Shown here piece by piece: positions 2,876-33,380 of a stretch of 64,000 nucleotides of DNA (positions are counted from its first letter, which is position 1; the number at the start of each line of letters is the position of its first letter). The stretch comes from Botryllus schlosseri. Its lineage: Eukaryota. Where the stretch lies: assembly GCA_051294905.1 (NCBI GenBank), contig CM119383.1:20832001-20896000 (forward strand). Direction: 5' to 3'. Under the pieces are notes generated by a model that was not told the origin of the DNA, ran no database searches, and saw only the letters and a program-made list of their open reading frames with translations. The position numbers and the translations under genes are program-made.

Positions 2876-3500
2876 ATGGAGATTATTGCTAGTACAACAT
2901 ACGACTATAGTATCGACTTGACAATATACATTCGCAATAGAATGGTCTCAGCGAAATTGATTATGAAAGTAGTCTTTTACGCCCGTGGCGTAGTCGAACC
3001 CGATGCGAAAGCGAGAAAGATCGCACCCGACCGGCTGAGCTTTCTAGTCATGGCAAAATCGCCGTTTCATAGAAACGTGCGATTGCCGCTATCGTTGGCA
3101 CCGATGCCAAACGACTTTGATTCGCCACGGAGGAACAATATGATTCAGGAGCAAGGTCATGTATTTATCACCACCCATTTCAATGGCCGCTCCACAATTG
3201 CGGGCCTGATGATCAACGAGGACTTTAAAGCTGAACTGCTCGTCTTTTACGACGAAATGATGGCCCTGTCACCATCTGGACTGCTGCGCTCCGTGCCTTT
3301 GGTGGTCGCTCGCTCGCTCGCCGAACGACAACGTCGTGAGACCGACGGGCCGCAGCGGTCGCCGACCACGATTCTATGTGCCGAACCACGTTCCGCAGGC
3401 GCAACCGGCACCGCCCACTGGAGCAGTAGTCCGCAACCTCGTCGGCGCGGCGGGAAGGCCGAGACGTGTGATTCGGGCCCCGGTCCGAAAGGACCTTTGA
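2876..3500 (+). pseudogene. Family A paralog A1 (about 207 aa), one frameshift in the 3' part
   Basis: Homologous to ORFs at 18414 and 26541. An alternate frame near 3400-3500 restores the conserved end RPRRVIRAPVRKDL*. The 258-aa track ORF reads past it in the wrong frame. Confidence 0.8.
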
Positions 3501-3829
3501 TTTCATTTTGTGCCTGCCTTAAAGTTTCGTTTAACCGTGCTTATGAAGTATTGCCATTACGCCGAATTTTATGCATTGTTTTGCCTTTTTTAGTAATAGT
3601 AAGTTCATTTAATTGTTTTGTTTTGGCCACCTTTGCAAGTATCGTGTTTTAATGCCGACTGTGTCGTTGTTATTTTTTGTTGGCCCCTTGTGTCTAGTGT
3701 GTGTATTTTATTTCATTAATATCAGGTTTTATTGCAATCTTCAATGTTGTATCGCATTTCTTTTAACCTCAATGACTATTTTGCAGATCGTACTATCATG
3801 GCGTTAGTGTAAACGTTTTCTAAAATACT

Positions 3830-4170
3830 AGTTAACCACTGCAATGCGTCTTGAACAGAATTGGGCAGAAAGAGGTCGGTGTCAGCCTGTCGGAACAGTG
3901 CGACGGTGTCAAGCAGGGGGTGGAGTGAGGATGACTCTTCGTGTGAGAAGAAGTACTGTGTAACAGTACGTGAACTTTAGTGAGCATGGCGTTGTTCGAT
4001 CACGCCGTGCTTTCTGAAGCTATATTTACTGTTACATACTATCACAATACTAATATTAAATGGTTGTGTAGAAAGTGTTTTGCATACGAGGTCACGCTAC
4101 AGTGTCTTGCCCGTCTTGCATGTGCTTTTTTGAGTTGTACGTGCAAGGTTTGTCATAACACTGTCTCGTG
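3830..4170. repeat. Conserved A-B intergenic block (other copies about 19370-19800, 27510-27750, 28160-28560)
   Basis: Shared core such as gaagtactgtgtaacagtacgtgaactttagt...ttgttcgatcacgccgtgctttc is visible in all four copies. Confidence 0.85.
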
Positions 4171-4511
4171 ACAAGGGTTTCGTTGTCGAGGGACTAGCTG
4201 GTATGTGTCACTATGTAAACTTCAAAGAGCACAAACTTGTTACCCAAGTTCATGTTCCGTGAAGTGAACATAGTGAGCATAGTGTCTTCAAGCTTATATA
4301 TTACCACCCATCTTCTTTCTGTGAATAGCATTTGGACTTGCAGTTTTATTGTGCAATTCGTATCATGTATCGAATTTCTTTCGCGTTGTCAGGAAGTTGC
4401 GTTTTAATTTTTCTTTACGTTCTTTCATAATGACAGTCATGCTGCTGTGTGGAATCGTGCTTTCAGTAGTTACTTGTATTTGTCTAGAGATACTAAAGCT
4501 ATATCATTATA

Positions 4512-4949
4512 ATGACTAAATCGAACCCAAAGGCCAGCGACGGCTATTTCGTGCAGACTGTATATCAATTTGACGCGTCGCAACATCCTGACATTGTTCA
4601 GTTGGAGACGAAGACTTTACCGATTTCTGCTGATTCTGATCCTGGACCTGCTCCGGTTCCTGACCCAGAGGATCCGAATGCTTATCCACTGGCACCATGC
4701 GACCTGAACCACGAAGGTCGTAAAATGCTCGTAAGTGCTGAGCAATATATGGCTTGGTATGAAGAAAGGTTTCCTGGTCAACAGGAGAAGGTCCAGGATG
4801 AAGGTGATCTTTTCGATGGGTAGGTACAAATCAGTCCGGAATTTCCGACGGGTGGCAATGGAGGAAAGCCCCTCAAGGAGGTCAAACAGACGACGCAGAA
4901 AAAACAAGATGACGAAGCCGCGAAGTTAACGGCGTCTGCTGAACAATGA
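4512..4949 (+). pseudogene. Family B paralog B1 (145 codons, acidic/Pro-rich, unknown), internal TAG at 4821-4823
   Basis: Colinear with and the same length as intact B2 (19989-20426). Reading through the TAG gives ...TASAEQ*. Confidence 0.85.
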
Positions 4950-5305
4950 TTGCTACCTACAAAACTTGCAAATCTCTTTCGTCGAAATGAACTCAAACGT
5001 TACTTGTGCTTTCTGTTGCTTCGAATTCGTGTCGTTCGCTACGCATTTGTTTTAGGTATCGCATTATTTCTGACGTTGTAAAAACTAGTAAAGTCTAACT
5101 CGAACTATACTACATTTCATGACGTACTACATTTCATGACGTTGTCCGTGATATCTGTAACTTGCGTTCAAGTTAACATTACCTCTACAATCTGCCTATA
5201 TAATGTAGCTGTATCAACTCTCATCACTTTTTATTTCGATAGCGTTGTTTGGCAAAAAGTTAACACTCTATGATTTGTTTCGTAAAACAGCACAGTACCT
5301 TAAAA

Positions 5306-6570
5306 ATGTCCTATAGAACTCCGACGAAAAGCCCTTTCGGAAAGGAGAGGAGGAAGAATCCTGATTTTTCTGCCGATTGGTATCAGCATTTCCCGAAAGA
5401 TTTCCTCAGGCCTTACGGCCGCTCTGTCGTTCCGGAAGATGTATCCGACGAATCTGTCAACAGTAAATTGCAGACCTTTACCTGCGAATGGTTAACAAGG
5501 CCGGCAGTTGCAGCGTCCGAGTTTGCCGAAACGCTGCTTCGCAATCGCAACACCACGCCTGCTCTCGAGGATATCATGGATCCGAGAGCTTTCCAACAGT
5601 TTCACGCGCATCTGAATTCCGTTATCAACGAGGTCAATCCTCTCTGGATAAGTCCAGCAAATCCGGCTGGCGAGACGACTCTGACGAAAGAAGACGTGTC
5701 GGCGAGGTTCGAACGCCTTGAAAGTCTGATGATCCAGCAAAAGTCGTCGTTCCTGGATCGATGTATCGATGTCATGGCCGATTGCGGACACGCTATGTAT
5801 GTAACAGCGCTTCATCTCAAAATGACGTCGTTCTTGATGCGGAAAAAAGACGCATGGGCCCTCAAATTTAGATCGCATCCCGATCACGAGGACTTTAAAA
5901 AAATCCTAGCGCTCGGTCTTACGCTGAAATCGTCTTTACCGGATACATGATCAAAAAAGGATTCAATGCCGCGCCAATCGAGACACCGTCGGGAAGACGA
6001 ATTTCTGATTTCATGCTCGACCAACCGTCATCTTCGTCTGTGCTCGTGGGTGTGTCGCAATCACTTCCTACCCAAGTTCCTGCTCCGGTCCCGTTTCACG
6101 GAGCTCCGCCACCCTCCGTTTCGGTTCCACTTTCTGTTCAGGATCCGGCACCCTTCTATCCACCTTCACCTTCCCCACCCGTTCGCATTCGAGTCTCAAA
6201 CGCTCCCGGAATGGTTAGGGCCCCGTTCCCCGTTTCTGTGCAAGTCCTGAGTGGTTCTCGAATGGGTCCAGCTGCGGCACAGGTTTCCGGTCAATTTCCG
6301 AACGGTTCTCAACTACTTCGAAGTCCGACAGTAGTTTCAGCGGATCCTCTTCGTTTAGCGCATGCTCGTCCGATGATTCAAGTTCCGGTAGCGTTTCAAC
6401 CGGATAACGTAGCAGTTGGTGGAAATGTTGCTGGAGCTGCGTTGGAGGACGAAAATGTTCCATGCTCCAGTGGCAGCGTTCAAGGTCAGCTTACGTCCGT
6501 CGGTGTCAACAGGGAGAAGCGAAGCAACCATGACAAGACGGGAAACCCCGAGAAGAAGAAAAACGTGTAA
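5306..6570 (+). pseudogene. Family C paralog (unit I), 1-nt deletion in the A-run near 5900
   Basis: Track ORFs 5270-5950 and 5947-6570 together are colinear with intact C at 29675-30931 (tttaaaaaaatcc versus tttaaaaagaatcc). Confidence 0.88.
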
Positions 6571-6721
6571 CTCAAGAATGAGCTGACGTGTTCGATATTT
6601 CGTTTTGTCACACCTTAACTTTCATTTTGTTGTTCGTTTGTGATGCCTTCGTAAATTTCTTTCGTTTGTTGTTACAGATCATAAATTGTACAACTAGGTA
6701 TCACTCTAGGTGACATACGAT

Positions 6722-7900
6722 ATGAGCAAGCCAACGAAGACATCGTCAAGCCGTCTGCTGTTGTCTGAAAATAATGTTTCACTTGCGAATAGCATCGTTG
6801 CCGACCTGCGGAAGATATTTCCTGACATGCGTCTAGACCATTACTTATTGCGATTCAATATTCATCCCACCAATGCTAACCATCAAATGCTCATGATGGC
6901 TCTATACCGAGTAGGGCTGGGCACAATGATTCGAGTACTCGTATCTGAATCGAGTATTAATTTTAATGATTCGAGTCGAGTAGTAAAAGACGATTTTGTC
7001 GAGTACTGAAATTATGCGCTCCTCACCACTGAAAGTTGATTTATCAACGAAGAGTTTATCAACGATCAACGAGTTTATGCTAATTTCACTGTTGAAGCCT
7101 TAAAACATTGATTGGCCGTATCGTAGCATACGAAACATGAAGTACAAAGCTACAAACGTTACTGGAAATAGCACATTTCCGAAGTCATGATCATCCCACA
7201 ATATTGTCACCAAGTGCAATGAAATCGGTATGGTCGAAAAAAATAACAAAGTATCCTTAATATGATGGATAAAAGGCATTATATTCTTTGTGGTCGCTTA
7301 AAAGGTACAAATTTGAACTTTGACAAATATTATTCTGCTATGACGTCATAATGAGTGATACTCGATTACTCGACTCGACTCGAAGCATTTTACGTGATTC
7401 AGAATCGAATCACTCAGGTACTCGATTTTGCCCAGCCCTAATACCGAGAGATTACCCGCCATCAAGTTCTGGTTGCCATGATTACTCAAGCGTTACGACC
7501 TGCCGTACTATTGCCGCAGGATGCGTTGCGTGTCAACAGTAGTTCTCAAACGTTGCCGGCGTCACTACCGACTGATCTGAATGCTCCTCTACATCGAACT
7601 GCTTCTCCGGTGCTTCCAGTATCGTCGCAGCTTTCTGTACAAGTGCAGAGATCTCCTAAAGAGAATCGACGGTCGCTACTCCATGACCTGCTCAAGGCTC
7701 AAGAGCAGAATGATGCACCAACGGTTCCAGTTACGGCACGGAAACGTGTCAAAGTCGAGAAAGCTTGTCAAACGGAAAGAATTCCGCGACTCATCGATCT
7801 GCTTCCTATCAAATACGACAAGAAACTTTTTCCACCGGATTTAGTCCCGGAATCGCCACCGGTTTCCGTTCAAGTTGATACGAAATCTGTTCAAACGCTT
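6722..7900 (+). pseudogene. Family D paralog D1, interrupted by a MITE; 3' end uncertain
   Basis: Removing 6912-7448 gives ALYREITRHQVLVAMIT, matching D2 ALYREMTRHQVFVTMIT. Confidence 0.85.
6912..7440. mobile_element. hAT-type MITE, 529 bp
   Basis: TIR tagggctgggca / tgcccagcccta; exact 8-bp TSD ataccgag (6904-6911, 7441-7448). Confidence 0.92.
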
Positions 7901-9030
7901 GGTACAGTGGTGTCGGATAAAACAGAACCACTAAGAATAGCATTTGAGACACAAAGTGGGTCGTTGCCGTGTACATTAGGGTTGTTCAGATTTGGGCAAT
8001 TTTTTGGAAACTTGTTTTGCGTAATTCCAAATAATAGTTTAGTGCATAAAAACACCTCTAAAACCAATTTTGATCATTTTCATCGCGGTCTTCCTTGCGC
8101 GCAAAGCCCCCAAAGACCCACGAGTCAATTCTCCTTACTAGCGACGATTCACCATTGCTGGTTTGTAGCTTTTGTGAAGTTTGCGGTGGAAAACGGCAGA
8201 GTAGAGCTGGGAAATATCAGGTTGAATCATCTTTTTCACAATTGAACTTACCTACATTTCTATACATGCCAAATGTGTTTCACCTTCCCGTATTTGGTAC
8301 AGGTAGCCGGGTGGTAGGCCTATGTATGAACGAATACAGGCATATTCAGCCGGTTTTAACTCTGTAAATGTTAATCAAAGGCATATTGTATATGAATGTA
8401 ATTTCACCTTTATAGTAGCTCCAATTCACCTCATCCGCATCAGGTTTGCAGTATCTAATAAGTCTCCGAAAGTTGACACCCCCCCCCCCACCTCCGAACA
8501 CAAAAACTCAGGCCTGTCCTGTCCAAGACGTTTTCACGACGTTTTCACAGTAGCGAATACGGCCAGAATGCAAATCTCAAAAGCTCACGACACTAGGCTT
8601 TTTCTCAAATGATCATGATAGTTAAGTCTAAATAGGGGTCCTGATCCTCAACTACCAATGCATTCTGTCAGAAAACGTCCACGGTGTTCTTACGGAAACA
8701 GAAACAATAATCTCCATACATATTAGTCATTGTCGTCACCCACTATGGTATGTGCTTACAACTGAGTTAACATAAGAAAAAGAAATCTTGCACAGACTAT
8801 GTTTCTGAAACTTTTGATGAATTTATTGTTTCTGAAACTTTTGATGAATTTATTGTAAGGAAATTTGCATTATCAAACTTGAAAAGCAGAATAAGGCACA
8901 AATCCGGACATAGTAGGCCGACCATTTACGTGACTTGAGACAATTGTGAAATACAGTTATTATCATTGAAGAACATGTTGAGAATTAGGTAAGCACCAAA
9001 ACAAAAAGTGGATAACAACAGGCTCTAGTC

Positions 9031-11872: not shown

Positions 11873-14851
11873 ATGGAAGAGGATTATATATCCAGGCTTC
11901 GGGATTTCTCAAAACTGGAGTTTCGCGCGAAAATAGAAGTGATCAGCAACGGAAGACCAACGCCGCAACTAAAAGGTTTGCTTCAAAATATGGGAAAGAA
12001 GAAAATGCGCACTTTTCAATCGGACTGGTATACCCGAAAAGAATGGCTGTGTGGCTGCGCTTTAAAAAATCGTCTTTACTGCTTTCCCTGCCTTTTGTTT
12101 TCAACTTCTATGTCTGGACTACCACGGGATATTGTGACTAGAAAAATTTGACACGAAGCCTCAGCAGACATGAGAGATCGATAACTCATATTCAAAGCAC
12201 GATTTCTGCAAAATATTTCGGAAATTCCAGGATCGATACGGCTTTGAACGAACAGCGGAGACTCGATATTAGCATCCACAATGCAAAAGTAACGGAAAAC
12301 CGAGATATTTTAAAAGACCTGATTAATGCAACCTGCTTGTTAGGTAAACAGGAGCTAGCATTTCGAGGAAACAATGAGAAGGCAAGCAGAGCTGTTACAT
12401 GCTTTTGCCGAGAAAGATGAAAGGTTGGCAAGACATTTGGAGACATCCAGTGTGTTTTCTGGCTTGTCAAATCGAACGCAGAACGATTTAATTGAGGCAG
12501 TCGGTGATGTAATTCGCAATGATATAAAAAGTGAGATTAATGCTGCCAAATTTGTCGCTGTAGAGGTAGACGAAACAACGGATGTCACAAATAAAGCACA
12601 GATTTCTGTTATTTTCCGCTATGTAGAAAAAGGGGGATTAGACTGTGTAGTCAAGGAGGCCTTTTTGGGATTTGATGACGTAAGTGAGGACAGACGAGCC
12701 TCTGCGGTAGCTTCGTATGTCTTGAGTGTATTGGAAAAATACAGCTGTGTCGAAAAGCTAGTAGCTCAGACATATGACGGGGCTGCTGTGATGGCATCAG
12801 AGCTTAATGGAGTGCAAACTAAAATTAAAGAAAAAGTACCAGGGGACATGTTCACACACTGCTATGCACAAGCTTAACCTTGTGCTCCAGCATTCAGCAA
12901 AATGTATGCCTGAGAGCAGAGCGTTTTTTAAAACACTTGAGGGACTAGGGCAGGGGCGCGGGCGACATACGACCCGCGGGCCGGATTCGGCCCGCGAAGG
13001 GATTTTGTCCGGCCCGCGGACAGTTTTCCATCTTACATCATAATGTGACCCGCAGCCCCAGTTTGCTGAGATTCCTTACTACTTGCTTACTACGTCAAAT
13101 TTTAGTGATCGTATGTTATTATATACGTGTATCCGCAGCGTGCGAGAGTGAAGCTTACGCGTAAGTTCGTCGAAGCGAGAAGACTTGCATTATCGGCATT
13201 TACGATGTACTCAACCCTAATATCGTCTGTGGTAATCATGGTGTTTGTCGACTACAATGATCATGATCATTTACACCAGGCTGATATATCTTATTTTTGA
13301 ATCCGTAACCGTCGACTTGTAGCACGTCACACTTCTAGGCTTTCGTAAGTCACCGCCCATGCCAGGGGTCGCTAACTAAAAACTGGTCATGGGCCTCATG
13401 AATTCAATATCGAGATTAATTAGGCCACATAGTTGAGAAACGACGCTATCTCGTAACCTACTCAAACCCTATTTAAATGATATCTTGGTAAATTTGGGGT
13501 ACCGGGCTAATCGAACGCCTTGAAATCTTAATTAGGCCTAAGGATTGCACCGTCTGTTCGTTGATCAGTTGGAAGCAGACATGACGGCGCCTGTATAACA
13601 ATGCTATTCTCAAATCCACAGTGTCTTCGTCATTATCGGCGAGAAATGGCTTTGAATTGACATTGCTGTCGTTAAAATACATTCATTAAATACGATTTAT
13701 TCCTTGTATACGCGGATAAATTGGCGAATAATGTATCGATTCAGCAATCCGGCCCGCCAAGTACCTAATTTTCCTATATCCGGCCCGCCGACTGGAGAAG
13801 TTGCCCGCCCCTGGACTAGGGTCATTTTTTAGCAAATCCTCGAAGCGCACCCTTTTATTGGATGAAGTTGTGAAACGGCGCTCACCATGAGCAGCGTCCA
13901 CAAGATGGAGTTCAAATTCCCGCCTGCTACAGACAACAAGCATGTACCAATCTGATCTGCGTGCCGTATTTCGCATCATTATTGAAAATCCTGACAATTG
14001 GGATAATGAAACTCAAATGATGGCCGCTGGATATTGTCGTTGGCTGACAAAAGCATCAACATGCTTTTTAATTATGGCATATGAAGACGTATTTTGTGAA
14101 ACCGATGCGCTTTTTAGAGTGTTGCAAAACAAGGTCATGGACATTGGCTATTGTTGTGCGCGAATCCAGGACACCATCGAAGCTGTTGAACGCATGAGAA
14201 GGGAGTTTAACATGATGTAACAGCGATTTGAACAGAAATGCAGTAGACTTGAAGTAACCGATAGCGGAAGAAATCAGTCGGTCAGAGATGAGAGAAAACG
14301 AATGTTCTACAGCATTTTGGATAACATCCTTGTTCAAACGAAAGCTAGGTTCGATCATTTTGGGGAGCTAGCTTTCCTCGGTTTGGTCGACTGTACAAAA
14401 TTTAATGAGATGTCACGACATTTTGATGACACCAAACTACAGAGCCTGTCAAAATATGCAAAGTTTTTTGACTTTGTTAGACTAAAGACTGACCTCATCG
14501 GACGGTACAGCTCGCAAACATTGAGGAATGAGTGAAAATCCAGGAGAGCTTCTGAGATTTTTAACCCAGAAAGATCTACTTCAGACGGTTCCAGAGGCCA
14601 TCAAGTTGCTCCAACTGGTGCTAACTGTGATAGCTACTACAGCGTCAGTGGAAAGGTCTTTCTCTGCGTTAAAAAGACTCAAGACATACAGTCGAAATAC
14701 GACCGATTCAGGGCGACTTTCATCTTTGGCCCTCATCTCAATTTAGGCGAAGAGACTTTTGAAACTGAAGGAGAACAAGGAGGACTTTTACAACGAAGTC
14801 ACAGAAATTTTTGTGGCAAAGGATAGGCGCATGGAATTTATTTACAAATAA
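11873..14851 (+). pseudogene. hAT transposase (TTF zinc finger / ZMYM1-like type), frameshifted and MITE-interrupted
   Basis: LYCFPCLLF, ELAFRG, VEVDETTD, QTYDGAAVM, HCYAHKLNL and TASVERSFSALKRLKTY (hAT dimerisation region). Confidence 0.88.
12951..13813. mobile_element. hAT-type MITE, 863 bp, inside the hAT transposase
   Basis: TIR caggggc(gc)gggc; TSD gactaggg (12943-12950, 13814-13821). Removal restores KTLEGLGSFFSKSSKRT. Confidence 0.9.
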
Positions 14852-16860
14852 TGTCCACAAACAGTGTCCGTTCCAATCCTTGAGACAATGTAATACCGAA
14901 ATTAAGTTCTTGAATAATATTTCTTGTGTTTCTTTTCATACTTTTCGTTGAGTAATCTGTAATAAATCGATTAAAACTGAATATTTCACGTGCGTGCGTG
15001 TTTGTGAGTGTGTGTGTGTGTGGGGGGGGGGGTCCGTGCCTCCCCAACCATGAACCTCACCGCACGTCACTGTGTACGATACACTTGAATCTATGGCTAA
15101 AGAGAAATCACCCGGTACTGATGGTCTTACTGTAGAATTCTACATCACCATGTGGAAAGCAATTGGCAGAAAACTTACACAGCTAGTAAATAATGCAATA
15201 CTACTAGGAAAAATGCCAAAAAGCTGGAAGTTAGCAAAAGTTATTTTGATCCATAAAGGGAAAGAAAAAAGGAAATTGGGGAGTTGGCGTCCCATCTCCC
15301 TACTCAACATTGACTATAAAATCATTGCAAAAATCCTGAACAAGAAACTGACCAATGAAATATCACCGCGATAAACCTATCGAAGGGTACATAATGACTA
15401 TCGATGCAAAAAAAGCATTTGACAAAGTGAACCACAGTATGCTAATCAAAATACTAGAAAAACTCCAAGTTACTCGCGAAACGCTAAACGCCATTAAAGA
15501 GATATATAACAACCCAATCGCAATAGTGGAAGTAAACGGACTAAAAGCAGCGGAAGTCACATGTCTAAGAGGCATTCGTCAAGGATGCCCTCTCAGCATG
15601 ACACTGTACGCCATAAGTGCTGATCCTCTAGCCAACAGGATAGATACAAACGAGAAAATCAAAGGAATAAGAATCGGAAGCATAACCCATAAACTGGACC
15701 AATTTGCTGATGACGTAACCCTATACATTAGCTCAACAGGCTCAATACATGAGATACTAGAGGAATACGACAAACTATATAAGGTGACGGGGCAGGAAAT
15801 AAACAGAGAAAAGACAGAAATCCTAGCACTGAACCTAAGATCACGATGTATCCTGCAAAGCTCGCCACATAGGCCTACGCACTTGCTTAGATCGAGTGCA
15901 AAAATCCTGGGCATACATCATGGAGAACAAGAAGAAGACTTCAACTATGGAAAAATAATACAAGGACTTCGAAAATCGGCTAACTTTATCAAATCCAAAA
16001 AAACTGTCATGGCTGGGGAAAATCACTGCCATAAAAGCTTTCATAATAACTAAAGTAACATATACTTATTCCAATAAGCAGTTGCGTAAAGAATATTTGA
16101 AGGAAATGGAAAAACTCTGATTCGATCTACTCTTTGAGCCCAGAGAAACTAGAGCAGAATAGCAGAAACACCCTGAAAAGACCAAGAAAAGAAGGGGGAA
16201 TCGGAATGCCAGACATTGACACGGCGGTGAATACGAGGAGAATCAAAAGGATGCAGGAACTATCCCAGCTCGACGAACCTAAAGAGATCTGGCACTCAGA
16301 GGCCGTATATAACCTCTCAACAAAGGTGAGAAGTAAAAATGCAAAGTTATACAAGAACAACTGTCCTCACAGACACAAACCAACGGAAAGCTTGGAAAAA
16401 GAAAGAGAAACATATACCTCGATATTGAGGGAAAACGAATATGCACACGAGCTTACCCAGTAAGAAGTATATGCGTTACTCCTCAGGCAGACAGCAACAC
16501 ATAAGGGAGAAGAAATGAAGAACTGGAAAAGGATATGGCTGTACGAGAACAACATCAAAGAACTCGTCAACAACAACCAGAGAGTCATATCCTACAGAAT
16601 TAATACCGAGAGTTATTTTACAGGATCAAGAAAAATGGCGGCTGGGTGGGAAAACACCAAAAACAAGAAGATAAAAAATAAATGCAAACTTTGCACGAAC
16701 GACGAAGAGACTCTACACCACTTATATGTAGAATGCGAAACTTACAAAAAAATATTTAATATCATCAGAAATGACCTGGAGGATGCACTCCAAACACACA
16801 TCGATGCCGAGCCTAAGAAGATAAAAACGAACGCGTACGACGGGCCACATGCCTCTACGA

Positions 16861-17404: not shown

Positions 17405-17954
17405 CTCTACGATAATACCAGCATACATGGATCTCAAAACCGAAATATGGAGATGGAAAATATCCCTAGACATACAAAATGAGTATGCTGAAGAAATAGG
17501 AGCGCAAACCGAAATCATCCGAAAACGGATAAACGCAAACAGAGAAAGCCGAGCCCGTGAGCAAAAAAGAACGGAAGACACACGCGCGCGCGATTTGACG
17601 TAAACGTGTCTGTATATAAATGATATATGTGCGTAATATAGCCTACTTGTGGATAAGCTTACTTGAAGGAAAACTTGAACATTGCTAACTTGATGTATTC
17701 CATGAAATACTGTATACGTTGAACCCCACACTTATCATCATGCTTAACCATAAGATTAACATCTTAAAAGCTGATACAATTTATTTTTTGTGTGTGCACT
17801 TTGAAATAAAATCACTGAAAGTTAGATTGCAGGTCATGGCGAAGGTTACTGGTTCGAATCACGGTGTGACCTTGTTTTATGTGATCGGTGTTTAGCGTCG
17901 CTTGAGTCAGATATTCGGTTAGATTTAGCTTTGTAGAGTTGCTCGAGTCATAAC

Positions 17955-18165
17955 GCGCCAAGGGGTGGGGGGTGTAAGCGCGGTGCGTTTTCTCGCATCG
18001 CGCGGACGGTTTTTTCGCTTGTGCGCGGCTTTCATTGAAAACGCGCCAGCTGGGGGGGGGGTCGTAGCGCGGTGCGTTTTCGCGCATCGTGCGGACGGAT
18101 TTTTCGCTTGTGCGCGGCTTTCATTGAAAACGCGCCAGCAGGGTGGGGGGTGGTAGCGCAGCGTT
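17955..18165. repeat. Two to three copies of the about 90-bp GC-rich upstream repeat (same unit as 25.6-26.5 kb)
   Basis: gcgcggtgcgttttcgcgcatcgtgcggacggatttttcgcttgtgcgcggctttcattgaaaacgcgccagc unit. Confidence 0.85.
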
Positions 18166-18413
18166 GCGTGGGACCCTCTGGGACCTGCTCACGTTTCGGT
18201 GGTTAAGTTCAGTCAGTTTGTAGATGTCAGGGTGGATGAGTTTGCGTTATTACAGTCAAAGGCGACACCATATCTGTGTCAGCGTTTTTCAGGTCGCGTT
18301 AGAGCTACTCGGCCTTCATTTCTTCGAGTACCTTCTTCCAATCCGGGTTTTTCTCTTTCAATCATTGGTTCAGTAGCATATTCATTTTCATGTTTTTCGT
18401 TATTAGAAACAAA

Positions 18414-19031
18414 ATGGAGACCGTAATTAGAGCCTATGACAATAAAATCAATATCACAATATACCAAAACCGTCGAGTTACACTTGCAAACCTCATCATT
18501 AAACCAGGACTTTACGCGCGTTGGGTCGTGGAGGGCGACTCTAGAGTTACATGTAACGAAGATGGGAGATTAAAGTACAAAGTCCTACCGGGGTTTCCAT
18601 TCCATTCCAACGTCTCTTACCCGTCTACTTTGGACGTCTTGCAGGAAGACTTTCATTCTCCTCGACAATTCAAAGTTATCGAGTTTCAGGGCAACCTGTT
18701 CCTTGCCCCCCAGTGGCAAGGCCGTAAAACAGTAGCCGGCCTCATATTTTACGATGACTTTGAGGTCTTGGCCCATCTGTACTACGATAAGCAGGTGGAA
18801 ATCATACCATCTGGCCTCAAGCAGCCCGTCATTCTTAAAGTGGAAGAAAAACCGTTTGACAACGTCGTAAGGCCAGTCTTCCGTGCCGGTGGCCCTCCGG
18901 TCTATTGGAGGCCAAACCACGTGGCGGCGCAGCAGCAACCACCGCAGCAGCTTGCGGTTGTCCGTACGTTAGATGGAGTGGCAGCAAGGCCAAAAAGAAA
19001 TATTCGACCACCAGTCCGAATGGACTTGTAA
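18414..19031 (+). CDS. Family A paralog A2, 205 aa, unknown function
   Basis: Intact ORF, good ATG context, homologous to A1/A3, ends RPKRNIRPPVRMDL*. Confidence 0.8.
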   Translation: METVIRAYDNKINITIYQNRRVTLANLIIKPGLYARWVVEGDSRVTCNEDGRLKYKVLPGFPFHSNVSYPSTLDVLQEDFHSPRQFKVIEFQGNLFLAPQWQGRKTVAGLIFYDDFEVLAHLYYDKQVEIIPSGLKQPVILKVEEKPFDNVVRPVFRAGGPPVYWRPNHVAAQQQPPQQLAVVRTLDGVAARPKRNIRPPVRMDL

Positions 19032-19988
19032 TTTGACTCATTGTCGTTTCTTTAAGTTTCTTTGCTCTTGCTATTTGAAGTACCTTTGGACATTTAATTT
19101 TTTTTCATGCATTTTGCCATCTTTTTTATTTAAACTAAGTTAAATTAATTTATTTCTTTTGGGCCCATTTGCTACTATCATGTATTGCGTTATGTGTCGT
19201 TCTTATTTTGTTTTGCCCACTTGGTTCCAATATTTGTCTTGTTTTATTTTATTATTGTCAGGATTTTATCGCTTTTACCGCAATTTTAACCGCATTTCTC
19301 TTATTCGCTCTGTTTCTTTTTCAGATCGTATGCGTTAGTCTAAACGTGTTCTGAAACTAGGTGTTCTGAAACACTAGTTAACTACTGCAATGCGTCTACG
19401 ACAGAATGGGGCATAAAGACGTCGGTCTCAGCTTGTCGGTACAGTGCGAGGATGTCAAGCAGGGGTTGGAGTGAGGACGACTTTTCGTGAGAGAAGAAGT
19501 ACTGTGTAACAGTACGTGAACTTTAGTCAGCATTGCGTTGTTCGATCACGCCGTGCTTTCTAAAGCTTTATTTACTGTTACATACTCTCACAATACTATT
19601 ATAAAGTAGTTGTGCACGAAGTGTTTGTTCTTGCGAGGTCATGCTACAGTGTCTTGCCTGTCTTCCATGTGCTGTTCGAGTTGTACGTGCAAGGTTTGGC
19701 ATAACACTGTTTCGTGACATGGGTATCGTTGTCGCGAAACTGCCTGCTATGTGTCACTATGTCAACTTCAAAGTGCACGAGCTTGTCACACAAGTTCATG
19801 TTAATTGAAGTGAACATCGTGTTACAAAACATCGTAATAATCGTCGGACATAGTGCAATTAAGGATGCGCAAGTCTTGCTTAAAATTCTTTCTATGTTCT
19901 TACATGATGACACTCATGCTGTTGTGTGGAATCGTGCTTGCAATTGTTACTTGTAATTGTCTACAGATCCTAGACCTATATCAATATA

Positions 19989-20426
19989 ATGACTACGTCC
20001 AAGGCAAATGACGGAGAAGGGTATTTCGAGGAGACTGTATATCAATTTCACGCGTCGCAGCATCCTCACATTGTTCAGTTGGAGACGAAGACTTTACCGA
20101 TTTCTGCTGATTCTGATCCTGGACCCGAACCGGTTCCTGACCCTGAGGATCCAAATGCTTATCTACTTATTCCAGCCGACCTGAACGGCGAAGGTCGTAA
20201 AACGCTCATAACTCCTGAGCAATATGTGGCTTGGTATGAAGAAAGGTTTCCTGGTCAACAGGATAAGGTCCGGGATGAAGGTGCTCTTTCCGATGGGCCG
20301 GTACAAGTTTGTCCGGATTTTTCGCTCGGTGGCAATGAAGGAAAGCCTTTCGAGGAGGTCAAACAGACGACGCAGAAAAACAAAGATGCCGAAGTCCCAA
20401 ACTCAACGGCGTCTACTGAACAGTGA
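19989..20426 (+). CDS. Family B paralog B2, 145 aa, unknown function
   Basis: Intact ORF; core QHP.IVQLETKTLPISADSDPGP.PVPDPEDPNAY shared with B1 and B3. Confidence 0.8.
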   Translation: MTTSKANDGEGYFEETVYQFHASQHPHIVQLETKTLPISADSDPGPEPVPDPEDPNAYLLIPADLNGEGRKTLITPEQYVAWYEERFPGQQDKVRDEGALSDGPVQVCPDFSLGGNEGKPFEEVKQTTQKNKDAEVPNSTASTEQ

Positions 20427-20762
20427 TAGAGAATAAACAAAACTTGCAAATTTTTTTCGTCGGCATGAACTCAAACGTTACTTGTGCTTTCTGTTTCTTC
20501 GAATTCTTGTCGTTCGATACGCATTTGTCTTAGATGTCGCAGTATTTCTGGCGTTGTAATAATCAGTAAAGTATATCTTCAACTATACTATATTTCACGA
20601 AGTTGTCTGTGATATCTCCTAATTTGCGTTTACGGTAACATCATCCTCAATTTCTATGTAATCTAGCCGTATCAACTCTGATCACTTTTTATTTCGATAG
20701 CGTTGTTTTGCAAATGTTTAACAGTCGATGTTTTGTTTCTAAAACAGTACAGAAACTTAAAA

Positions 20763-21386
20763 ATGTCTCATAGAACTCCGACTAAAAGCCCTTTCGGAAA
20801 GGAGAGGAGGAAGAATCCTGATTTCTCCGTCGATTGGTATCAGCATTTTCCGAAAGATTACCTGAGGCCTTGCGGCCGGTCTGTCATTCCGGAGGACGTA
20901 TCCGACGAATCTATCAACAGTAAATTGCAGACCTTTAGCTGCGAATGGTTAACAAGGCCGGCAGTTGCAGTGTCCGAGTTTGCCGAAACGCTACTTCGAA
21001 ATCGCAACACCAAGCCTGCTATCGACGATATCATGGATCCGAGAGCTTTTCAACACTTCCACGCTCATCTGAATTCCGTCATCAACGAGGTCCGTCCTCT
21101 GTGGATAAGCCCGGCGAACCCGGCTGTCATTCGTAAAGGCATGAATGACACAACGCATGTGTCTCTTCAACACTCCGCACCGGCTACGGTTACTTCTCCT
21201 GTCCGGAATGCGGCTGAAACGGTTCCGGTTCCGATACTTGTTCGTTCTGATACAGAGACGATCGAGGATGCTATTCAAAGTGCTTCATACGACCAAGCCA
21301 ATGCGCAGCATGATATGGCTTCTCAAAATATGGTCCAGAAACCGAGCCAATTGCTGGAACTTTTGTTACAAAGACAAGAAAAATAG
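20763..21386 (+). CDS. Chimeric family C ORF (N-half like 29675 copy, C-half like 38005 copy)
   Basis: Near-identical to 29675-30038 up to about 21126, then matches the sequence from about 38648 (VIRKGMNDTTHVS...LLQRQEK*). Confidence 0.8.
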   Translation: MSHRTPTKSPFGKERRKNPDFSVDWYQHFPKDYLRPCGRSVIPEDVSDESINSKLQTFSCEWLTRPAVAVSEFAETLLRNRNTKPAIDDIMDPRAFQHFHAHLNSVINEVRPLWISPANPAVIRKGMNDTTHVSLQHSAPATVTSPVRNAAETVPVPILVRSDTETIEDAIQSASYDQANAQHDMASQNMVQKPSQLLELLLQRQEK

Positions 21387-21584
21387 GCACACGGAGTGAT
21401 AGCATGCAATGTCTTGCTTGTTTTACTTACTCTTGTTCGTCTTTTTGTCGTATGTTGTGTCTTTGTGTTGTTAGCGTATGCTTCTTCCTTGTTCTTCAAT
21501 AGTTCTTCGCTTATTTTCATTCCAATCTTTCAAGTAAATTGTTCGTTTTTAATAGATCGTTTGCAGTTTGGCCTTGTGATTCTT

Positions 21585-22200
21585 TGTCTGGATGCGTTGA
21601 AATCGAGTGCAGTGTTGAGAAGGTAGCAACGATATGTGAAACCTCACAGGCAGGGTAACGTCATATTATAGCTACCGTGCCCTAAAGTTCTGCATATAGT
21701 CTTACAGAGTTATCGCTGACACGGTTAGTAAGGTGATTTCAATACGAACAACTTGCAGGTCATATAGCTTCGTTTAAAAGCGATATGGTCTACGAAGTTA
21801 TACTTATTGATTCACATATCCGTTGTCGCAACGCCAAAAAGTTCTACGGAGCAGCTAATAACGCCGGGAGTGTACAAATCAGGTGTCACGAGAAGAACGT
21901 TGCTGACGTAGATAGTATCGACAATATGTGGAAAATTCAGCGCAGCATAGCTTAAATTACACCCATACGACGCCGAATTTTTCCATATTGAATCACGTAT
22001 TTGTCATTGTATGATCGTCGAGTTCAGGGCGACGAATAGCGATAGACCAGGACTCTAGGAGAAGCGTATCGTGTCATATGCGTAAACTGCACGATGCGAT
22101 CGACCTGAAAGTCTGCCATGGGATGTAGTTCGACGATTGGGTGCCACAAACAGTCATCCCATGCACCTCGTGCGGGCTGGGCGTGGTTGTGACGTCATAA
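21585..22200. repeat. Block T (candidate element 3'-terminal region); other copies about 23495-24075 and 39755-40391
   Basis: Three clearly homologous copies ending in stem catgggatg...catcccatg and gggctggg..gg.tgtgacgtcataa. Confidence 0.85.
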
Positions 22201-22299
22201 CAGTTAAGCACTTCTTACATGTTTCTATGTAGTGGCTTCCGTGTTATATCTACTTATTTATTTGCATAAGTATCTCTTTCTTGTATCATTACTACTAAT

Positions 22300-23112: not shown

Positions 23113-23115
23113 ATA

Positions 23116-23418
23116 TGTCTACTTTTAAATATTGTAATGTCGTGTTTGACTTACCACGAACTCCAGATGTACGCCAACGCGAATCAACTCTCGAAAACTG
23201 CCAACGACGAAATCGTGTCAAAAGAGTTTCACGAACGGTATGTACATCGTTTTCAATTCGATTCGCCACATTTCCTAGTCGTATTTATTTCAATATACAG
23301 GTTTTCACAACGCCTGCTGATGGCGGCGAACTTTGAAGCGGAGGGAAACAAAAAATACTCGTTCTCACGACGTCCGCTGATGGCGGCGAACTTCGACGCG
23401 GACACAAAAACAAAATAG
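23116..23418 (+). pseudogene. Family E paralog E2 (intron 23238-23300, frameshift near 23185)
   Basis: Homologous to 39315-39680 with the same 63-nt gtatgt...acag intron and the same terminal ...NFDADTKTK*. Confidence 0.65.
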
Positions 23419-25379
23419 TTTTTGCATATTTTCATCCTTTCCAATAACTTCTTCGTTTTTAATACATCGTTTTCATTGTGCCCTTGTTTCTCGTGATTCT
23501 TTGTCTGGATGCGTCGAATTAGACAGTAGTGTGGAGAAGGTAACAACGTTATCGGAAACTTAGTGGCAGGATAACGTCTTATTATAGCTATCGTGCCCTA
23601 AAGTTTTGCATATCGTGTTACAGATTTATAATTAGGGTTACAGTTACTAACATAATTTCAAACCAAGTATGCAGATGTCATATAGCTTCGTGCAAAAGCG
23701 ATATGGACGACGAAGTTATACGTATTGATTCACCAAAAAGTCCGAAGTTTGCGATTCAGGTGTGACGTGAACAGTATCGCCAATATGTGGAAAATTCAGC
23801 GCAGCATAGTTCAAATTACACCCATACGACGCCGAATTTTTCCATATTGAGACCCGCATTTCTCATGGGAAGTTCGTCGACTTCGGTGCGATCGATAAAA
23901 TTATACCAGGAGTAGCGTATCGTGTCTTAGTAGTAAACTACGCGATGCGATCGACCTGAAAGTCTGCCATGGGATGTAGTTCGACGATTGGGTGCCACAA
24001 ACAGACATCCCATGCACCTCGGGCGGGCTGGGCGCGGTTGTGACGTCATAATGGAGTAAAATCCGTTATTACATGTGACTATATGGTAACTACAGGGTTG
24101 GATCTACTTATACGAGTTTCATTAGACGTGTCTCTTTCTTGTAGCTATAATACTATTATAACTTTTCTGACACCCTATAGTTGCAGACATGCTAGACACT
24201 TCATTTTGGTGTCATTAGAAAGGTTGCAAAAAAATCTCCATCCGTTTTTTTTTTTCAAGTCTCTACTTCAAGTAGTTTTGGAGTAGTGGCTTTGTAAAGT
24301 AGTTTCAACGTAGTTTCAACATCGTGATAGCTACTGCCTTCATATTTGTATCGTACAATACTCGTTGCAAGAAAATTTTTCAGTCCAAGTATCAAGTAGA
24401 TTTGTCAAGTAGTTTTCGAGTAGTGGCTTTGTAAAGTAGTTTTGAGATATTTTCAACGCCGTGAGTGCTATCGAGTTGATTTTTGTATCGTTTAATACTC
24501 GTGGCAAGCTCAATCTTCAGTCCAAGTATCAAGTAATTTTGTCAAGTAACAAACATTTTATAGTTCTTTTAATATTTCGAAGTGCTTTCAGCGATGTTCT
24601 GATGGCGCTAGAGAGTTGATTTTTTCACGGATGATTGCTCTCGGCATGAACTATCTATAGTCAAAATTTCAAGTGGATTGGTCCACGTGGGAAGAAGTTA
24701 CGAAAGTCTTCGATGTTCCCAGGTATGTTTCCCGGATATGTATCCGGTTTTCATATCCGGATCCGCTTTCCAACGAAAGTCCTATTCAATGTGCTTACGC
24801 TGAAAAAGATTTCATAGCTCTAAGTTTCGTACTTCTCGAGATATGCACGTTCAAGTAGTTTCAAAACTACTTTTCAAGTACTACTTTTCAGCGGTTCATG
24901 CAAAATACTTCATATTTCGTCAAAAAATTCTATACAAGTCAAGAGTACTGCCCACGTTATTGTAGTTCATTCACTTTAGCACAGGATTTTATATATATTT
25001 ATTTTCATTAAAAAAACTACTTTTTGAAGTACTACTTTCCTGAGGTTCGGTGTAATCACTTAATTTTTGTCTAAGAGTGATCTACGGCCTCTCCTGAAGC
25101 CAGCGATGGCAAAAATTTCGGAATCGAAGATAAAAAATTGTCCGATTTTGTCGAATTTTTACTGAGTCCCACAACATTTTTTTTTATTTTTAAGCACATG
25201 TGCGCGTTCCCCTCTGTATTTGAAGATGCGCTGCAAAGGAATTTTTCAGATCCGACCACTATTACGATGTCTAGAGCCCGCTAAAGGTCCGATTTTGGCG
25301 CGCTTCAACCGGAGATATCTCGGCTCCGGTTGGTCCGAATTCGACAATTACTCCCGTCGTTTACCCGCCGTTTTCCCAA

Positions 25380-26470
25380 AAAAAATTATCAAATATTTTT
25401 TTCCCCCCCACACGAAGTTTGGAGTGTCTAGGACCAACTGGAGCCATTCTAGCCATGCGCGTGCGTTTGCGTTCGAGTCAGAATGAGTCAAAATTAGTCA
25501 ACTGAGCGCGCGCCTTTGCTTTCGAGTCAGAATGAGTCCCGCCGTTTACCCGCAAACATACGCATTACTCCCGCCGTTTTACCAAAAAAAAAAAATTATC
25601 AAATATTTTCCACCCCCACACGAAGTTTGGAGTGTCTAGGACCAACTGGAGCCATTCTAGCCATGCGCGTGCGTTTTCAATGAAAGCCGCGTCAGCTAGG
25701 TGGGGGGTGCTAGCGCGGTGCGTTTTCGCGCATCGTGCGGACGGATTTTTCGCTTGTGCGCGGCTTTCATTGAAAACGCGCCAGCATGGTGAGGGGTAGC
25801 AGCGCGGTGCGTTTTCTCGCATCCGCGATTGGTTGGTTTGTTCGGTTGTGCGCGGCTTTCATTGAAAACGCGCCAGCAGGGTGGGGGGTGGTAGCGCGGT
25901 GCGTTTTCGCGCATCGTGCGGACGGAATTTTCGCTTTTGCGCGGCTTTCAGAATGAGTCAAATGAGTGCGCGCGTTTGCTTTCGAGTCAGAATGAGTCAA
26001 AATGAGTCCAATGAGCGCGCGCCTTTGCTTTTGAGTCAGAATGAGTCCCGCCGTTTACCCGCAAACATAGGAATTACTCCCGCCGTTTACCCGCAAGGTC
26101 GAACGAAAAATTCAACTTTTCGAATTTTTTTTTTCGAAAAAAAATTTTTTTTTCTGAAAAAAAAATCAAATATTTTCCCCCCCACACGAAGTTTGGAGTG
26201 TGTAGGACCAACAGGAGCCATTCTAGTGATGCGCGTGCGTTTTCAATGAAAGCCGCGCCAGCTAGGTTGGGGGTGCTAGCGCGGTGCGTTTTCGCGCATC
26301 GTGCGGATGGATTTTTCGGTTGTGCGCGGCTTTCATTGAAAACGCGCCAGCTGGGTGGGGGGTGGTAGCGAGGTGCGTTTTCGCGCATCGTGCGGACGGA
26401 TTTTTCGGTTGTGCGCGGCTTTCATCGAATAAGCGCCAGCTGAGGGGAGGGGTCGTAGCGCTGCGTTGAA
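25380..26470. promoter_or_regulatory. Composite repeat array upstream of gene A3 containing TTTCGCGC (E2F-like) and TGAGTCA (AP-1-like) motifs
   Basis: About 90-bp GC-rich units. TTTCGCGC at 25724, 25905, 26290, 26379; TGAGTCA at 25484, 25954, 25993, 26032; AT-rich palindromes at 26115-26165. Regulatory role is inferred. Confidence 0.55.
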
Positions 26471-26540
26471 AATTGCAAAAAAAATTCTACCCGTTTACTA
26501 GCAAAATTCATGTTCACGTTCATTGTTTTTAGGCATTAAA

Positions 26541-27158
26541 ATGGAGGTGATATATGCTATGTACGATGAATGCATCGAAATTACTCTTTTCCGGCGTGAG
26601 CGAATGATCAAAGCGAGATTAATCATGAAGAATGGATACTTCGCTCGTGGCATTGTCATGAGCGACGTGGAAGTCGACAATACCGAGCCCGGCCGTCTCT
26701 TTCTCAGGATGAGACATGAAAATCCTTTACACAGAAATGTTATTGTCCCAACCAACTTACGTCCAATGGACAATGATTTCCACTCGCCTCGCAGTCGGTA
26801 CGTTGAAATCGTGCAAGGACATATCTTCATAAGTACTCACTTTAACGGCCGGTCAACTGTAGCCGCTCTTATGATAACAGAGGAATACAAAGCGCAGATG
26901 CTGGTGCTGTACGACGATCAGATGGTCATAACAGTGAATGGTATCGTCGAGTTGGTGAATTTGGTCGTCGATCGCTCGGCGAACGCTGATACCGTCATAC
27001 CGACGGACCGGAGCGGTCGACGACCAAATTTTGTTGCGACAGTTAATCGCACGCCCGCACTACCCGGACCGCCCATCGGACCGGTAATCCGGACTCTCGA
27101 GGGCGCGGCGGACAGGCCGAGGCGGGCCATCCGTGCCCCGGACCGATTGGATCTTTAA
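26541..27158 (+). CDS. Family A paralog A3, 205 aa, unknown function
   Basis: Intact ORF; ends RPRRAIRAPDRLDL*. Confidence 0.8.
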   Translation: MEVIYAMYDECIEITLFRRERMIKARLIMKNGYFARGIVMSDVEVDNTEPGRLFLRMRHENPLHRNVIVPTNLRPMDNDFHSPRSRYVEIVQGHIFISTHFNGRSTVAALMITEEYKAQMLVLYDDQMVITVNGIVELVNLVVDRSANADTVIPTDRSGRRPNFVATVNRTPALPGPPIGPVIRTLEGAADRPRRAIRAPDRLDL

Positions 27159-27866: not shown

Positions 27867-27910
27867 ATGGAAATTATCTGCAGTGCTTTCGATCGAAAAA
27901 TTCAGTTGTG
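27867..27910 (+). pseudogene. N-terminal stub of a further family A gene (MEIICSAFDRKIQL), body deleted
   Basis: Same ttttcag-aaata-ATGGA context as A1. Followed directly by a duplicate of the A3 3' flank (tgtcgtccttattttttgttggccacttgg). Confidence 0.55.
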
Positions 27911-30931: not shown

Positions 30932-31081
30932 ACTGACGTGTTTCATATCTCGTGTTTTTGTGATTTGTCAAACTTTAACTTTCATTTTCTTGTTCGTTTG
31001 TTATGCTTTCGTAAATTTTATTCGTTTCTTGTTACAGATTATTAATCGTAGAACTAGCTGTGACTCTAACTGAAATACGAT

Positions 31082-33367: not shown

Positions 33368-33380
33368 TATCGTACGCATA

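What the first reader, a model, noticed from the sequence alone, without database searches (positions are those of the whole stretch)
2876..27158. Family A: two-repeat beta protein with an invariant basic C-terminal motif, far more diverged than its neighbours
Seen: each A contains an ungapped 32-aa internal repeat, for example A1 SIDLTIYIRNRMVSAKLIMKVVFYARGVVEPD versus HVFITTHFNGRSTIAGLMINEDFKAELLVFYD. The same register holds in A2 and A3. A2 and A3 are both 205 aa. Three copies end RP(R/K)R.IR.P.R.DL*. A paralogs share well under half their residues by eye, while flanking B and C copies are highly similar. Five A loci exist (1172, 2876, 18414, 26541, 27867). Inference: an old tandem family that is swapped or diversifying, as expected for a host-interaction or structural protein. 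The tail resembles basic R.R..P.R tails of some gypsy integrases and may bind chromatin or act as an NLS.
Basis: partly seen in the sequence, partly recalled or inferred. Interest (0 to 1): 0.72.

Follow-up and report, generated by a model that had tools for sequence, protein, structure and literature searches.

The report
Orphan variable gene beside a Helitron
Family A is a real but orphan intronless gene family whose anciently diverged copies sit between much younger, recombining flanks in repeated gene units that include a rolling-circle (Helitron-like) transposase; its fold and function stay unknown and the claimed internal repeat is not statistically supported.

Summary
The family is real. 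There are two intact 205-aa genes (A2, A3), one copy with one frameshift (A1), one degenerate copy (A0) and a 14-codon stub. All three full copies end in the same basic C-terminal peptide.

- A copies share 39-48% of residues, and their synonymous sites are saturated (pS 0.75-0.83).
- Non-coding DNA just downstream is 75-97% identical between units.
- B copies have dS 0.07-0.42.
- Tree shapes differ between segments. A is therefore an old cassette inside recombining flanks.

The 32-aa internal repeat aligns in the stated register, but it is not significant (hhalign P=0.097; per-protein P=0.07-0.9).

A has no relative in Pfam, PDB, PHROGs, NCBIfam, a profile search of 1.84 billion protein representatives, or viral and metagenome contigs. 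AlphaFold failed (pLDDT 32).

The A-C-B-D units lie upstream of a Helitron-like Rep/helicase. A B-like ORF follows such a Rep/helicase in a coral and in a third, unidentified genome.

My best reading is a lineage-specific accessory gene of a composite Helitron-like unit. It would combine a type-specific beta-rich domain with a common docking or nuclear-import tail. The function is inferred, not shown. The likeness to gypsy integrase tails got no support.

The parts
1144..1600 (+). A0: degenerate copy of family A (pseudogene; reading frame broken at least once, no recognisable tail)
   Evidence: HMM of A1/A2/A3 only: E=1.2e-4, positions 33-86; a colinear weaker match to positions 10-35 in another frame; tblastn E 0.002-0.045
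2876..3500 (+). A1: full-length copy with one frameshift; both pieces were analysed apart
   Evidence: tail motif present in the C-terminal piece
18414..19031 (+). A2: intact 205-aa gene
26541..27158 (+). A3: intact 205-aa gene
27867..27908 (+). A stub: first 14 codons of an A1-like gene, then directly 3'-flank sequence (coding cassette deleted)
   Evidence: 2826-2886 matches 27817-27877 at 83.6%
26507..26540 (+). Conserved 5' block before each A start. A 15-nt motif TTCATKTTCRYSTTC lies at -34/-33, followed by a pyrimidine tract and AG about 10 nt before the ATG. It looks like a 3' splice site. The same block lies at 2842-2875, 18381-18413 and 27833-27866.
   Evidence: 5 matches in the window against 0.2 expected; the pattern was derived from these loci
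25675..26460 (+). 89-92-bp tandem repeats upstream of A3 (25675-25950 and 26241-26460); the same repeat lies upstream of A2 at 17952-18159
27550..27730 (+). Non-coding block between A and C, 93-97% identical between units (also 3860-4060 and 19410-19590). It contains a 7-nt perfect palindrome.
28944..29342 (+). C3, family C ORF (other copies 4512-4823 and 19989-20426); no known domain
29675..30931 (+). B3, family B ORF. Other copies: B1 5306-6570 (frame interrupted once), B2 20763-21386 (chimera of a B N-terminus and a B''-type C-terminus), B' 32138-33367, B'' about 38008-38883 (interrupted once).
31082..31786 (+). D3, family D ORF (partial copy D1 7478-8245). It shares its K-rich C-terminal ~40 aa with B.
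34222..37627 (+). Helitron-like Rep/helicase gene. The reading frame changes at least once; frameshift or short intron was not resolved.
   Evidence: Pfam Helitron_like_N 28.3 bits (curated cut-off 28.9), AAA_19, AAA_30. Relatives carry PF14214; the best is a Ciona intestinalis protein at 35% identity, E=1.6e-143. Frames counted.
39391..40381 (+). 3' region of unit 3, present twice after unit 2 (21498-22200 and 23189-24069)

Best explanation
Family A is a lineage-specific, intronless accessory gene carried in the 5' part of a repeated multi-gene unit about 14 kb long. The core of that unit is a Helitron-like rolling-circle Rep/helicase plus its companion ORF B.

Unit 3 reads: 89-bp repeats, A3, A stub, C, B, D, B', Rep/helicase, B'', 3' region. 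Unit 2 is a deletion derivative of the same unit. Unit 1 is a truncated copy.

Shown:
- A exists as very old sequence types. Synonymous sites are saturated.
- These types sit as cassettes between a short conserved 5' block and a conserved tail plus 3' flank.
- The flanks are young and have different histories, so they are exchanged or homogenised by recombination while the A domain is not.
- The protein as a whole is under constraint.

Inferred:
- The protein has a type-specific, beta-rich globular domain of about 145 aa.
- A proline/arginine-rich disordered linker follows it.
- An invariant 24-aa basic C-terminal peptide ends it.
- The common peptide docks every A type onto one shared partner (a nuclear import factor, or another protein of the unit).
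- The variable domain gives each type its own target, such as DNA or a host factor.

Whether A lies inside the mobile element's own ends is not shown.
For: - Family and tail.
- Age contrast: A pS 0.75-0.83 and pN 0.34-0.45, against B dS 0.07-0.42 with dN/dS 0.11-0.19. The A coding region is 42-67% identical at nucleotide level, against 75-97% in the next 600 nt of non-coding DNA.
- Incongruent relationships between segments.
- Different homology start points: within the tail for A1/A3, and in the last 10 codons for A1/A2.
- Cassette loss at the stub, between the conserved 5' block and the 3' flank.
- Linkage to the Helitron-like core: same strand and same order in three units.
- Unit 2 joins the A-C-B part to the B''-3' part that flanks the Rep/helicase in unit 3.
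- Rep/helicase domains.
- A B-like ORF lies directly after the Rep/helicase in Desmophyllum pertusum and in a Logan contig.
- Literature: Helitrons and Helentrons are known to carry extra ORFs, including RPA-like, OTU and hypothetical proteins (PMC4067079, PMC11417382, PMC6431247).
- Composition: the domain is near neutral, the tail has pI about 12 and 9-10 prolines, there are 0-1 cysteines and no signal peptide.
Against: - No element termini were found. Units 2 and 3 are adjacent, so tandem segmental duplication explains the copies as well as transposition does.
- The two related Rep/helicase-plus-B loci from other genomes have no A, C or D.
- A has no detectable relative anywhere, so nothing ties it to any Helitron outside this window.
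- Fold and binding roles are pure inference. The AlphaFold model is unusable (pLDDT 31.6).
- B and D use lysine-rich C-termini of the classical nuclear-import kind. A's different tail may therefore not be an import signal.
Confidence: 0.4

Rival explanations
1. A, C and D are ordinary host genes of a tandemly duplicated, fast-recombining cluster. A Helitron-like element (Rep/helicase plus B) merely inserted into or next to the cluster, or was domesticated there. A's old types are kept by balancing or diversifying selection, as in recognition or immune gene families.
For: - Units 2 and 3 are directly adjacent and no termini were found.
- A, C and D are absent from the Rep/helicase-plus-B loci of two other genomes.
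- B paralogs inside one unit evolved under purifying selection (B3 against B', dN/dS 0.12). That fits functional genes rather than dead transposon copies.
- Splice-acceptor-like sequences lie before every ORF.
Against: - B, the Helitron companion ORF, is interleaved with A, C and D in all three units in the same orientation.
- Unit 2 looks like an internal-deletion derivative that keeps both ends of unit 3.
- All the genes are intronless in their coding parts and have no homologs among annotated host proteins.
Confidence: 0.3
2. A is a single-stranded-DNA-binding accessory protein, the functional counterpart of the RPA-like proteins of plant, cnidarian and fish Helitrons. It would have a small beta-barrel domain, a disordered linker and a conserved C-terminal tip that recruits partners.
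For: - RPA-like ORFs are the classical Helitron accessory genes (PMC4067079, PMC6431247).
- The domain/linker/tip layout follows.
Against: - No Pfam OB or RPA family is hit, even at E up to 10.
- There is no PDB profile hit.
- The structure model is unusable.
- A domain that contacts DNA non-specifically is not expected to be the most variable part of the unit.
Confidence: 0.1
3. A is a small beta-sandwich (jelly-roll or nucleoplasmin-like) protein with an arginine-rich tail, that is, a capsid-like or histone-chaperone-like protein.
For: - Only strands are predicted for the domain.
- The tail is arginine-rich.
- The weakest of hints: the best PDB profile matches include a nucleoplasmin-like domain of histone deacetylase HDT2 at E=1.4.
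- It is the most variable gene next to a rolling-circle Rep.
Against: - E=1.4 is chance level.
- Foldseek with the poor model gives nothing.
- No acidic tracts are present.
- From general knowledge, a unit of about 14 kb is far beyond what a small single-jelly-roll shell holds.
Confidence: 0.05
4. A copies are decaying, functionless remnants, and the divergence is neutral drift.
For: Three of the five loci are damaged (A0, A1, stub).
Against: - Two 205-aa ORFs stay intact although synonymous sites are saturated.
- pN is about half of pS.
- 42 of 143 domain columns and 13 of 24 tail positions are invariant.
- Flanking non-coding DNA is far less diverged than A, so neutral decay since duplication cannot give the pattern.
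Confidence: 0.05

Closest known systems
Accessory ORFs of Helitrons and Helentrons (RPA-like, OTU protease, 'hypothetical proteins'; Thomas et al. 2014, PMC4067079; HELIANO survey, PMC11417382)
   Same: - It is a separate ORF on the same strand as a Rep/helicase.
- It is repeated together with the Rep/helicase.
- The lack of a known enzymatic domain is not unusual for this class.
   Different: - There is no sequence similarity to any of the described accessory domains.
- The gene lies about 7 kb upstream of the Rep/helicase in an unusually gene-rich unit.
- It occurs as very old types within young flanks.
- Its place inside the element's ends is unproven.
Mosaic 'immunity' or specificity regions of recombining mobile elements (general knowledge: strongly diverged module between homologous arms, as in lambdoid phage immunity regions)
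   Same: A short, deeply diverged module is bounded by conserved sequence on both sides. The flanks have different histories from the module.
   Different: This is an analogy of pattern only. The host is eukaryotic, no repressor-like or DNA-binding domain is recognisable, and only three units could be compared.
Basic C-terminal tails of LTR-retrotransposon integrases
   Same: It is a short arginine-rich, proline-containing C-terminal peptide.
   Different: No integrase, chromodomain or other retroelement domain is detected in A. No named hit came back from any search, so the likeness could not be tested beyond composition.
Bacterial SSB-type layout (general knowledge: folded domain, disordered linker, conserved C-terminal tip)
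   Same: It has three parts, with the tip as the best conserved stretch.
   Different: The tip is basic, not acidic. No OB-fold signal is present, and the folded domain is the variable part.

Membership tests
Helitron-like element (context of the unit) | Rep domain of the HUH type joined to a Pif1-like SF1 helicase in one gene | tested here: met
   Pfam Helitron_like_N at 28.3 bits (just under the 28.9 cut-off), AAA_19 and AAA_30. Homologs carry PF14214 plus helicase domains at E down to 1.6e-143.
Helitron-like element (context of the unit) | Defined termini with a 3' hairpin, and insertion without target duplication | tested here: inconclusive
   Homology between 3' regions ends near 40363-40381, but no clear terminal hairpin or 5' end could be assigned. 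Units 2 and 3 abut each other.
Helitron accessory gene (A as part of the element) | Lies between the element's termini and recurs in independent copies or in related elements | tested here: inconclusive
   A recurs in three linked units of one window. It is absent from the Rep/helicase-plus-B loci L001, L002 and L003.
RPA / OB-fold ssDNA-binding proteins | Match to OB or RPA profile families | tested here: not met
   No Pfam hit at E up to 10 and no PDB profile hit.
LTR-retrotransposon (gypsy) integrase | Integrase core (rve), zinc-binding or chromo domains next to the basic tail | tested here: not met
   No Pfam family for any A protein.
Internally duplicated beta proteins (two-repeat fold) | Statistically significant similarity between the two halves | tested here: inconclusive
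Per-protein P is 0.07, 0.91 and 0.11. One cross-paralog pair reaches p=0.001.
Nucleoplasmin-like / jelly-roll sandwich | Profile or fold match to a solved member | tested here: not met
   Best profile hit is E=1.4. Foldseek best is E=0.6 with a model of pLDDT 31.6.

The most novel reading that the evidence does not exclude
A is a previously unseen small beta-rich fold that serves as a type-specific recognition module of a rolling-circle element. Ancient cassettes would be kept apart by selection. Conserved arms (a splice-acceptor block at the 5' side, and the invariant tail and flank at the 3' side) would let them be exchanged between otherwise homogenised units. This would be a eukaryotic counterpart of the specificity or immunity regions of recombining mobile elements.
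Probability: 0.15. Interest if true: 0.7.

Novelty: new variant of a known kind. Interest (0 to 1): 0.45.

Why it matters
Accessory genes of animal Helitron-like elements are poorly known. The literature cited here describes capture of whole genes by Helitrons as exceptionally rare. Here a constrained orphan protein exists as deeply diverged types inside young, recombining flanks, next to a Rep/helicase and a companion ORF (B) that recurs in a coral and in a third, unidentified genome. This points to an unstudied multi-gene branch of rolling-circle elements or of genes derived from them. It also gives a concrete case for asking what keeps one module diverse while its surroundings are homogenised. 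If A is only a host gene neighbour, it remains an example of long-lived paralog types in a gene-converting cluster, which is of moderate interest.

Tried and rejected
- **Family libraries.** Pfam, PHROGs and NCBIfam scans of A, B, C and D found nothing.
- **Solved structures.** PDB sequence and profile searches found nothing below E=1.
- **Word-indexed protein search with A3.** Nothing.
- **Exhaustive profile search of 1.84 billion representatives.** It returned one hit, a 1577-aa repetitive protein matched on a short repeated stretch. I judge it spurious.
- **Exact look-ups of ten window proteins.** None is in the collection, so the source genome is not represented.
- **A profile against related loci and proteins.** Searched against all ORFs of the three related loci and against the Rep/helicase relatives; nothing.
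- **AlphaFold.** A gave pLDDT 31.6 and B gave 47.8. Foldseek on both gave nothing meaningful.
- **Window-wide RNA scans.** Rfam and tRNA scans found nothing.
- **Antisense ORFs inside A2 and A3.** They are not conserved.
- **Organism of the Logan runs.** A paper search for the run accessions found nothing, so the source organism stays unknown.
- **Failed script.** A first version of the repeat statistics timed out and was rerun.


Full report
**What is there**

The window is eukaryotic. It holds fragments of a gypsy-type RT (445-894), a LINE RT (15355-16053), a hAT-like DUF4371 protein (12374-12877) and a Plavaka-like transposase (60528-62321). It has no tRNA or Rfam hits. It also contains interstitial TTAGGG-type repeats.

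Family A consists of three full-length homologous ORFs on the + strand:
- A1 (2876-3500) has one frameshift. I handled its two pieces separately and never joined them.
- A2 (18414-19031) is intact at 205 aa.
- A3 (26541-27158) is intact at 205 aa.

Two further loci are damaged:
- A0 (1144-1600) is a degenerate copy. A profile built from the other three alone recognises it at E=1.2e-4 among the 1215 ORFs of the window and loci.
- The locus at 27867 keeps 14 codons of an A1-like gene and then passes directly into 3'-flank sequence.

**The protein**

- The first ~145 residues are the folded part. 42 of 143 columns are invariant among the three copies.
- A proline/arginine-rich stretch follows (pI about 12, 9-10 prolines).
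- The last 24 residues, V(V/I)R(T/N)L.G.A.RP(R/K)R.IR.P.R.DL, are the best conserved segment.
- There is no signal peptide and almost no cysteine.
- AlphaFold with the four available sequences gave pLDDT 31.6. That model predicts only strands, including hairpins at 10-29 and 95-112, but it cannot be trusted. Foldseek on it found nothing.

**The internal repeat**

Identities in that register are 8/32, 6/32 and 9/32 for A1, A2 and A3. It is among the best registers in A1 and A3, but it is not beyond chance:
- The probability that a shuffled sequence does as well is 0.07, 0.91 and 0.11.
- Profile-profile comparison of the two halves finds the same register with P=0.097.
- A column-shuffle test gives z of about 2.3.
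- One cross-paralog pair reaches p=0.001, but the self-comparisons do not.

With only four sequences it is not excluded either.

**Divergence contrast**

This is the strongest part of the finding.

| Segment | Measure |
|---|---|
| A copies | 39-48% amino-acid identity |
| A copies | pS 0.75-0.83 (saturated), pN 0.34-0.45 |
| B copies | dS 0.07-0.42, dN/dS 0.11-0.19 |
| C copies | dN/dS 0.55-0.80 |
| D copies | dN/dS about 1.2 |
| A coding region | 42-67% nucleotide identity per 60-nt window |
| Non-coding DNA after the stop | 75-97% nucleotide identity |
| ~200-bp block between A and C | 93-97% nucleotide identity |

The A domain is therefore much older than its surroundings. It has not merely evolved faster at the protein level.

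The relationships also disagree between segments:
- A1 and A3 are closest for A.
- Units 2 and 3 are closest for the 3' flank and for B (B2 against B3, 98%).
- C1 and C2 are closest for C.

Nucleotide homology resumes at different points: in the linker for A1/A3, and in the last ten codons for A1/A2. Together with the stub, where exactly the cassette is missing, this describes an old cassette between conserved arms in a recombining array.

**The 5' arm**

All four non-degenerate loci carry TTCATKTTCRYSTTC at -34/-33 from the ATG. A pyrimidine tract and AG follow about 10 nt before the ATG. C, B, B' and D also have a pyrimidine tract plus AG shortly before their ATG. No conserved AATAAA lies between A and C. 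This looks like a 3' splice site in front of each cistron. I could not test it.

**Context**

Self-comparison of the window shows three units:
- Unit 3 (about 25459-40381): 89-92-bp repeats, A3, stub, C3, B3, D3, B', a Helitron-like Rep/helicase (34222-37627), B'' and a 3' region.
- Unit 2 (17952 to about 25000): the same repeats, A2, C2, a B gene that joins a B N-terminus to a B''-type C-terminus, and the 3' region twice. It is an internal-deletion derivative that lacks D, B' and the Rep/helicase.
- Unit 1 (2536-7779): A1, C1, B1 and part of D, followed by unrelated transposons. A0 lies just upstream.

The Rep/helicase hits Helitron_like_N, AAA_19 and AAA_30. Its best relative is a Ciona intestinalis protein at 35% identity that carries PF14214. 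Its frame changes at least once, and I did not resolve whether by frameshift or by a short intron.

Family B has two relatives in 5.8 billion proteins: a Logan protein at 54% identity, and hypothetical protein OS493_019926 of the coral Desmophyllum pertusum at 23%. In the coral this gene lies directly after a Rep/helicase on the same strand. A Logan contig has the same two-gene layout. Rep/helicase plus B is therefore a conserved core. A, C and D are not found in those loci.

B is predicted helical, but the model is poor and has no fold match. B and D share a lysine-rich C-terminal module.

**No relatives of A**

All of the following were negative apart from one spurious repetitive hit:
- Pfam, PDB, PHROGs and NCBIfam
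- the word-indexed search
- the exhaustive profile search of 1.84 billion representatives
- the viral and metagenome contig scans

. The window's own proteins are not in the collection. The absence therefore partly reflects missing eukaryotic data.

**Interpretation**

I commit to this reading: A is a lineage-specific accessory gene of a composite Helitron-like unit. Its variable domain gives type-specific recognition, and its invariant tail docks all types to one partner or to the nuclear import machinery. My confidence is about 0.4.

The descriptive steps are shown: the family, the tail, the age contrast, the mosaic and the linkage to the Rep/helicase and B. The functional steps are inferred. 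Helitrons with extra ORFs are known (PMC4067079, PMC11417382, PMC6431247).

The main rival is a host gene cluster beside or around a Helitron-derived pair of genes. I could not find element ends, and units 2 and 3 are adjacent, so tandem duplication with unequal crossing-over fits as well as transposition does. Pure decay is disfavoured, because two ORFs remain intact despite saturated synonymous sites and pN is well below pS. The gypsy-integrase likeness of the tail got no support from any tool.

- Only one window and four sequences were available. The source organism is unknown.
- The bounds I gave to tools for the two pieces of A1 show where its frame changes.
- Consensus lines printed by the alignment tools were not used.

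Noticed in passing
window 2842-2875, 18381-18413, 26507-26540, 27833-27866; also before C, B, B' and D starts: Every ORF of the unit has a pyrimidine tract plus AG 8-45 nt before its ATG. The A loci add a fixed 15-nt motif at -34 with two branch-point-like TTCAT. This suggests a 5'-UTR intron or trans-splice acceptor before each cistron. No conserved AATAAA lies between A and C.
   Followed up: partly
window 3860-4060, 19410-19590, 27550-27730: A non-coding block between A and C is 93-97% identical between units, better conserved than any coding sequence of the unit. It contains a perfect palindrome GTACTGT-gta-ACAGTAC. A fourth, partly deleted copy lies after the stub (about 28100-28400).
   Followed up: partly
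window 17952-18159, 25675-25950, 26241-26460: G+C-rich tandem repeats of 89-92 bp lie directly upstream of A2 and A3. In unit 3 the whole ~500-bp upstream segment is duplicated (25459-25905 and 25968-26467).
   Followed up: partly
L001 6667-10552 (Desmophyllum pertusum MU827313.1); L002 2515-7370 (Logan SRR33157931): A B-like ORF directly follows a Helitron-type Rep/helicase on the same strand in two other genomes. Family B is therefore a conserved, undescribed second ORF of this Helitron-like clade. It has a helical N-domain and a long Ser/Lys-rich tail ending in a lysine run.
   Followed up: partly
window 20763-21386: B2 is a chimera. Its first ~140 codons are 98% identical to B3, and its C-terminus is of the B'' type (81% to 38646-39003). 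The middle of the B domain is missing. This is the junction that makes unit 2 a deletion derivative.
   Followed up: yes
window 30800-30931, 33250-33367 and 31660-31786: B, B' and D share their last ~40 residues (BLASTP E 1e-4 to 4e-5), ending in a lysine run that looks like a classical nuclear import signal. A's tail is of a different kind.
   Followed up: partly
window 54539-54813: Interstitial telomere-type repeats lie in head-to-head orientation (CCTAAC-type array followed by an AGGGTT-type array), flanked by other short tandem arrays.
   Followed up: no
window 45586-46596: A 70-bp satellite of about 14.5 copies with a 277-bp higher-order period, unrelated to the A units.
   Followed up: no
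window 33381-33781: Two 199-bp tandem copies at 99% identity lie between B' and the Rep/helicase gene.
   Followed up: no
window 60528-62321: An intact 597-aa ORF has a weak Plavaka (KDZ-type) transposase match (E=2.3e-5, below the curated cut-off). A further ORF lies upstream at 60108-60515.
   Followed up: no
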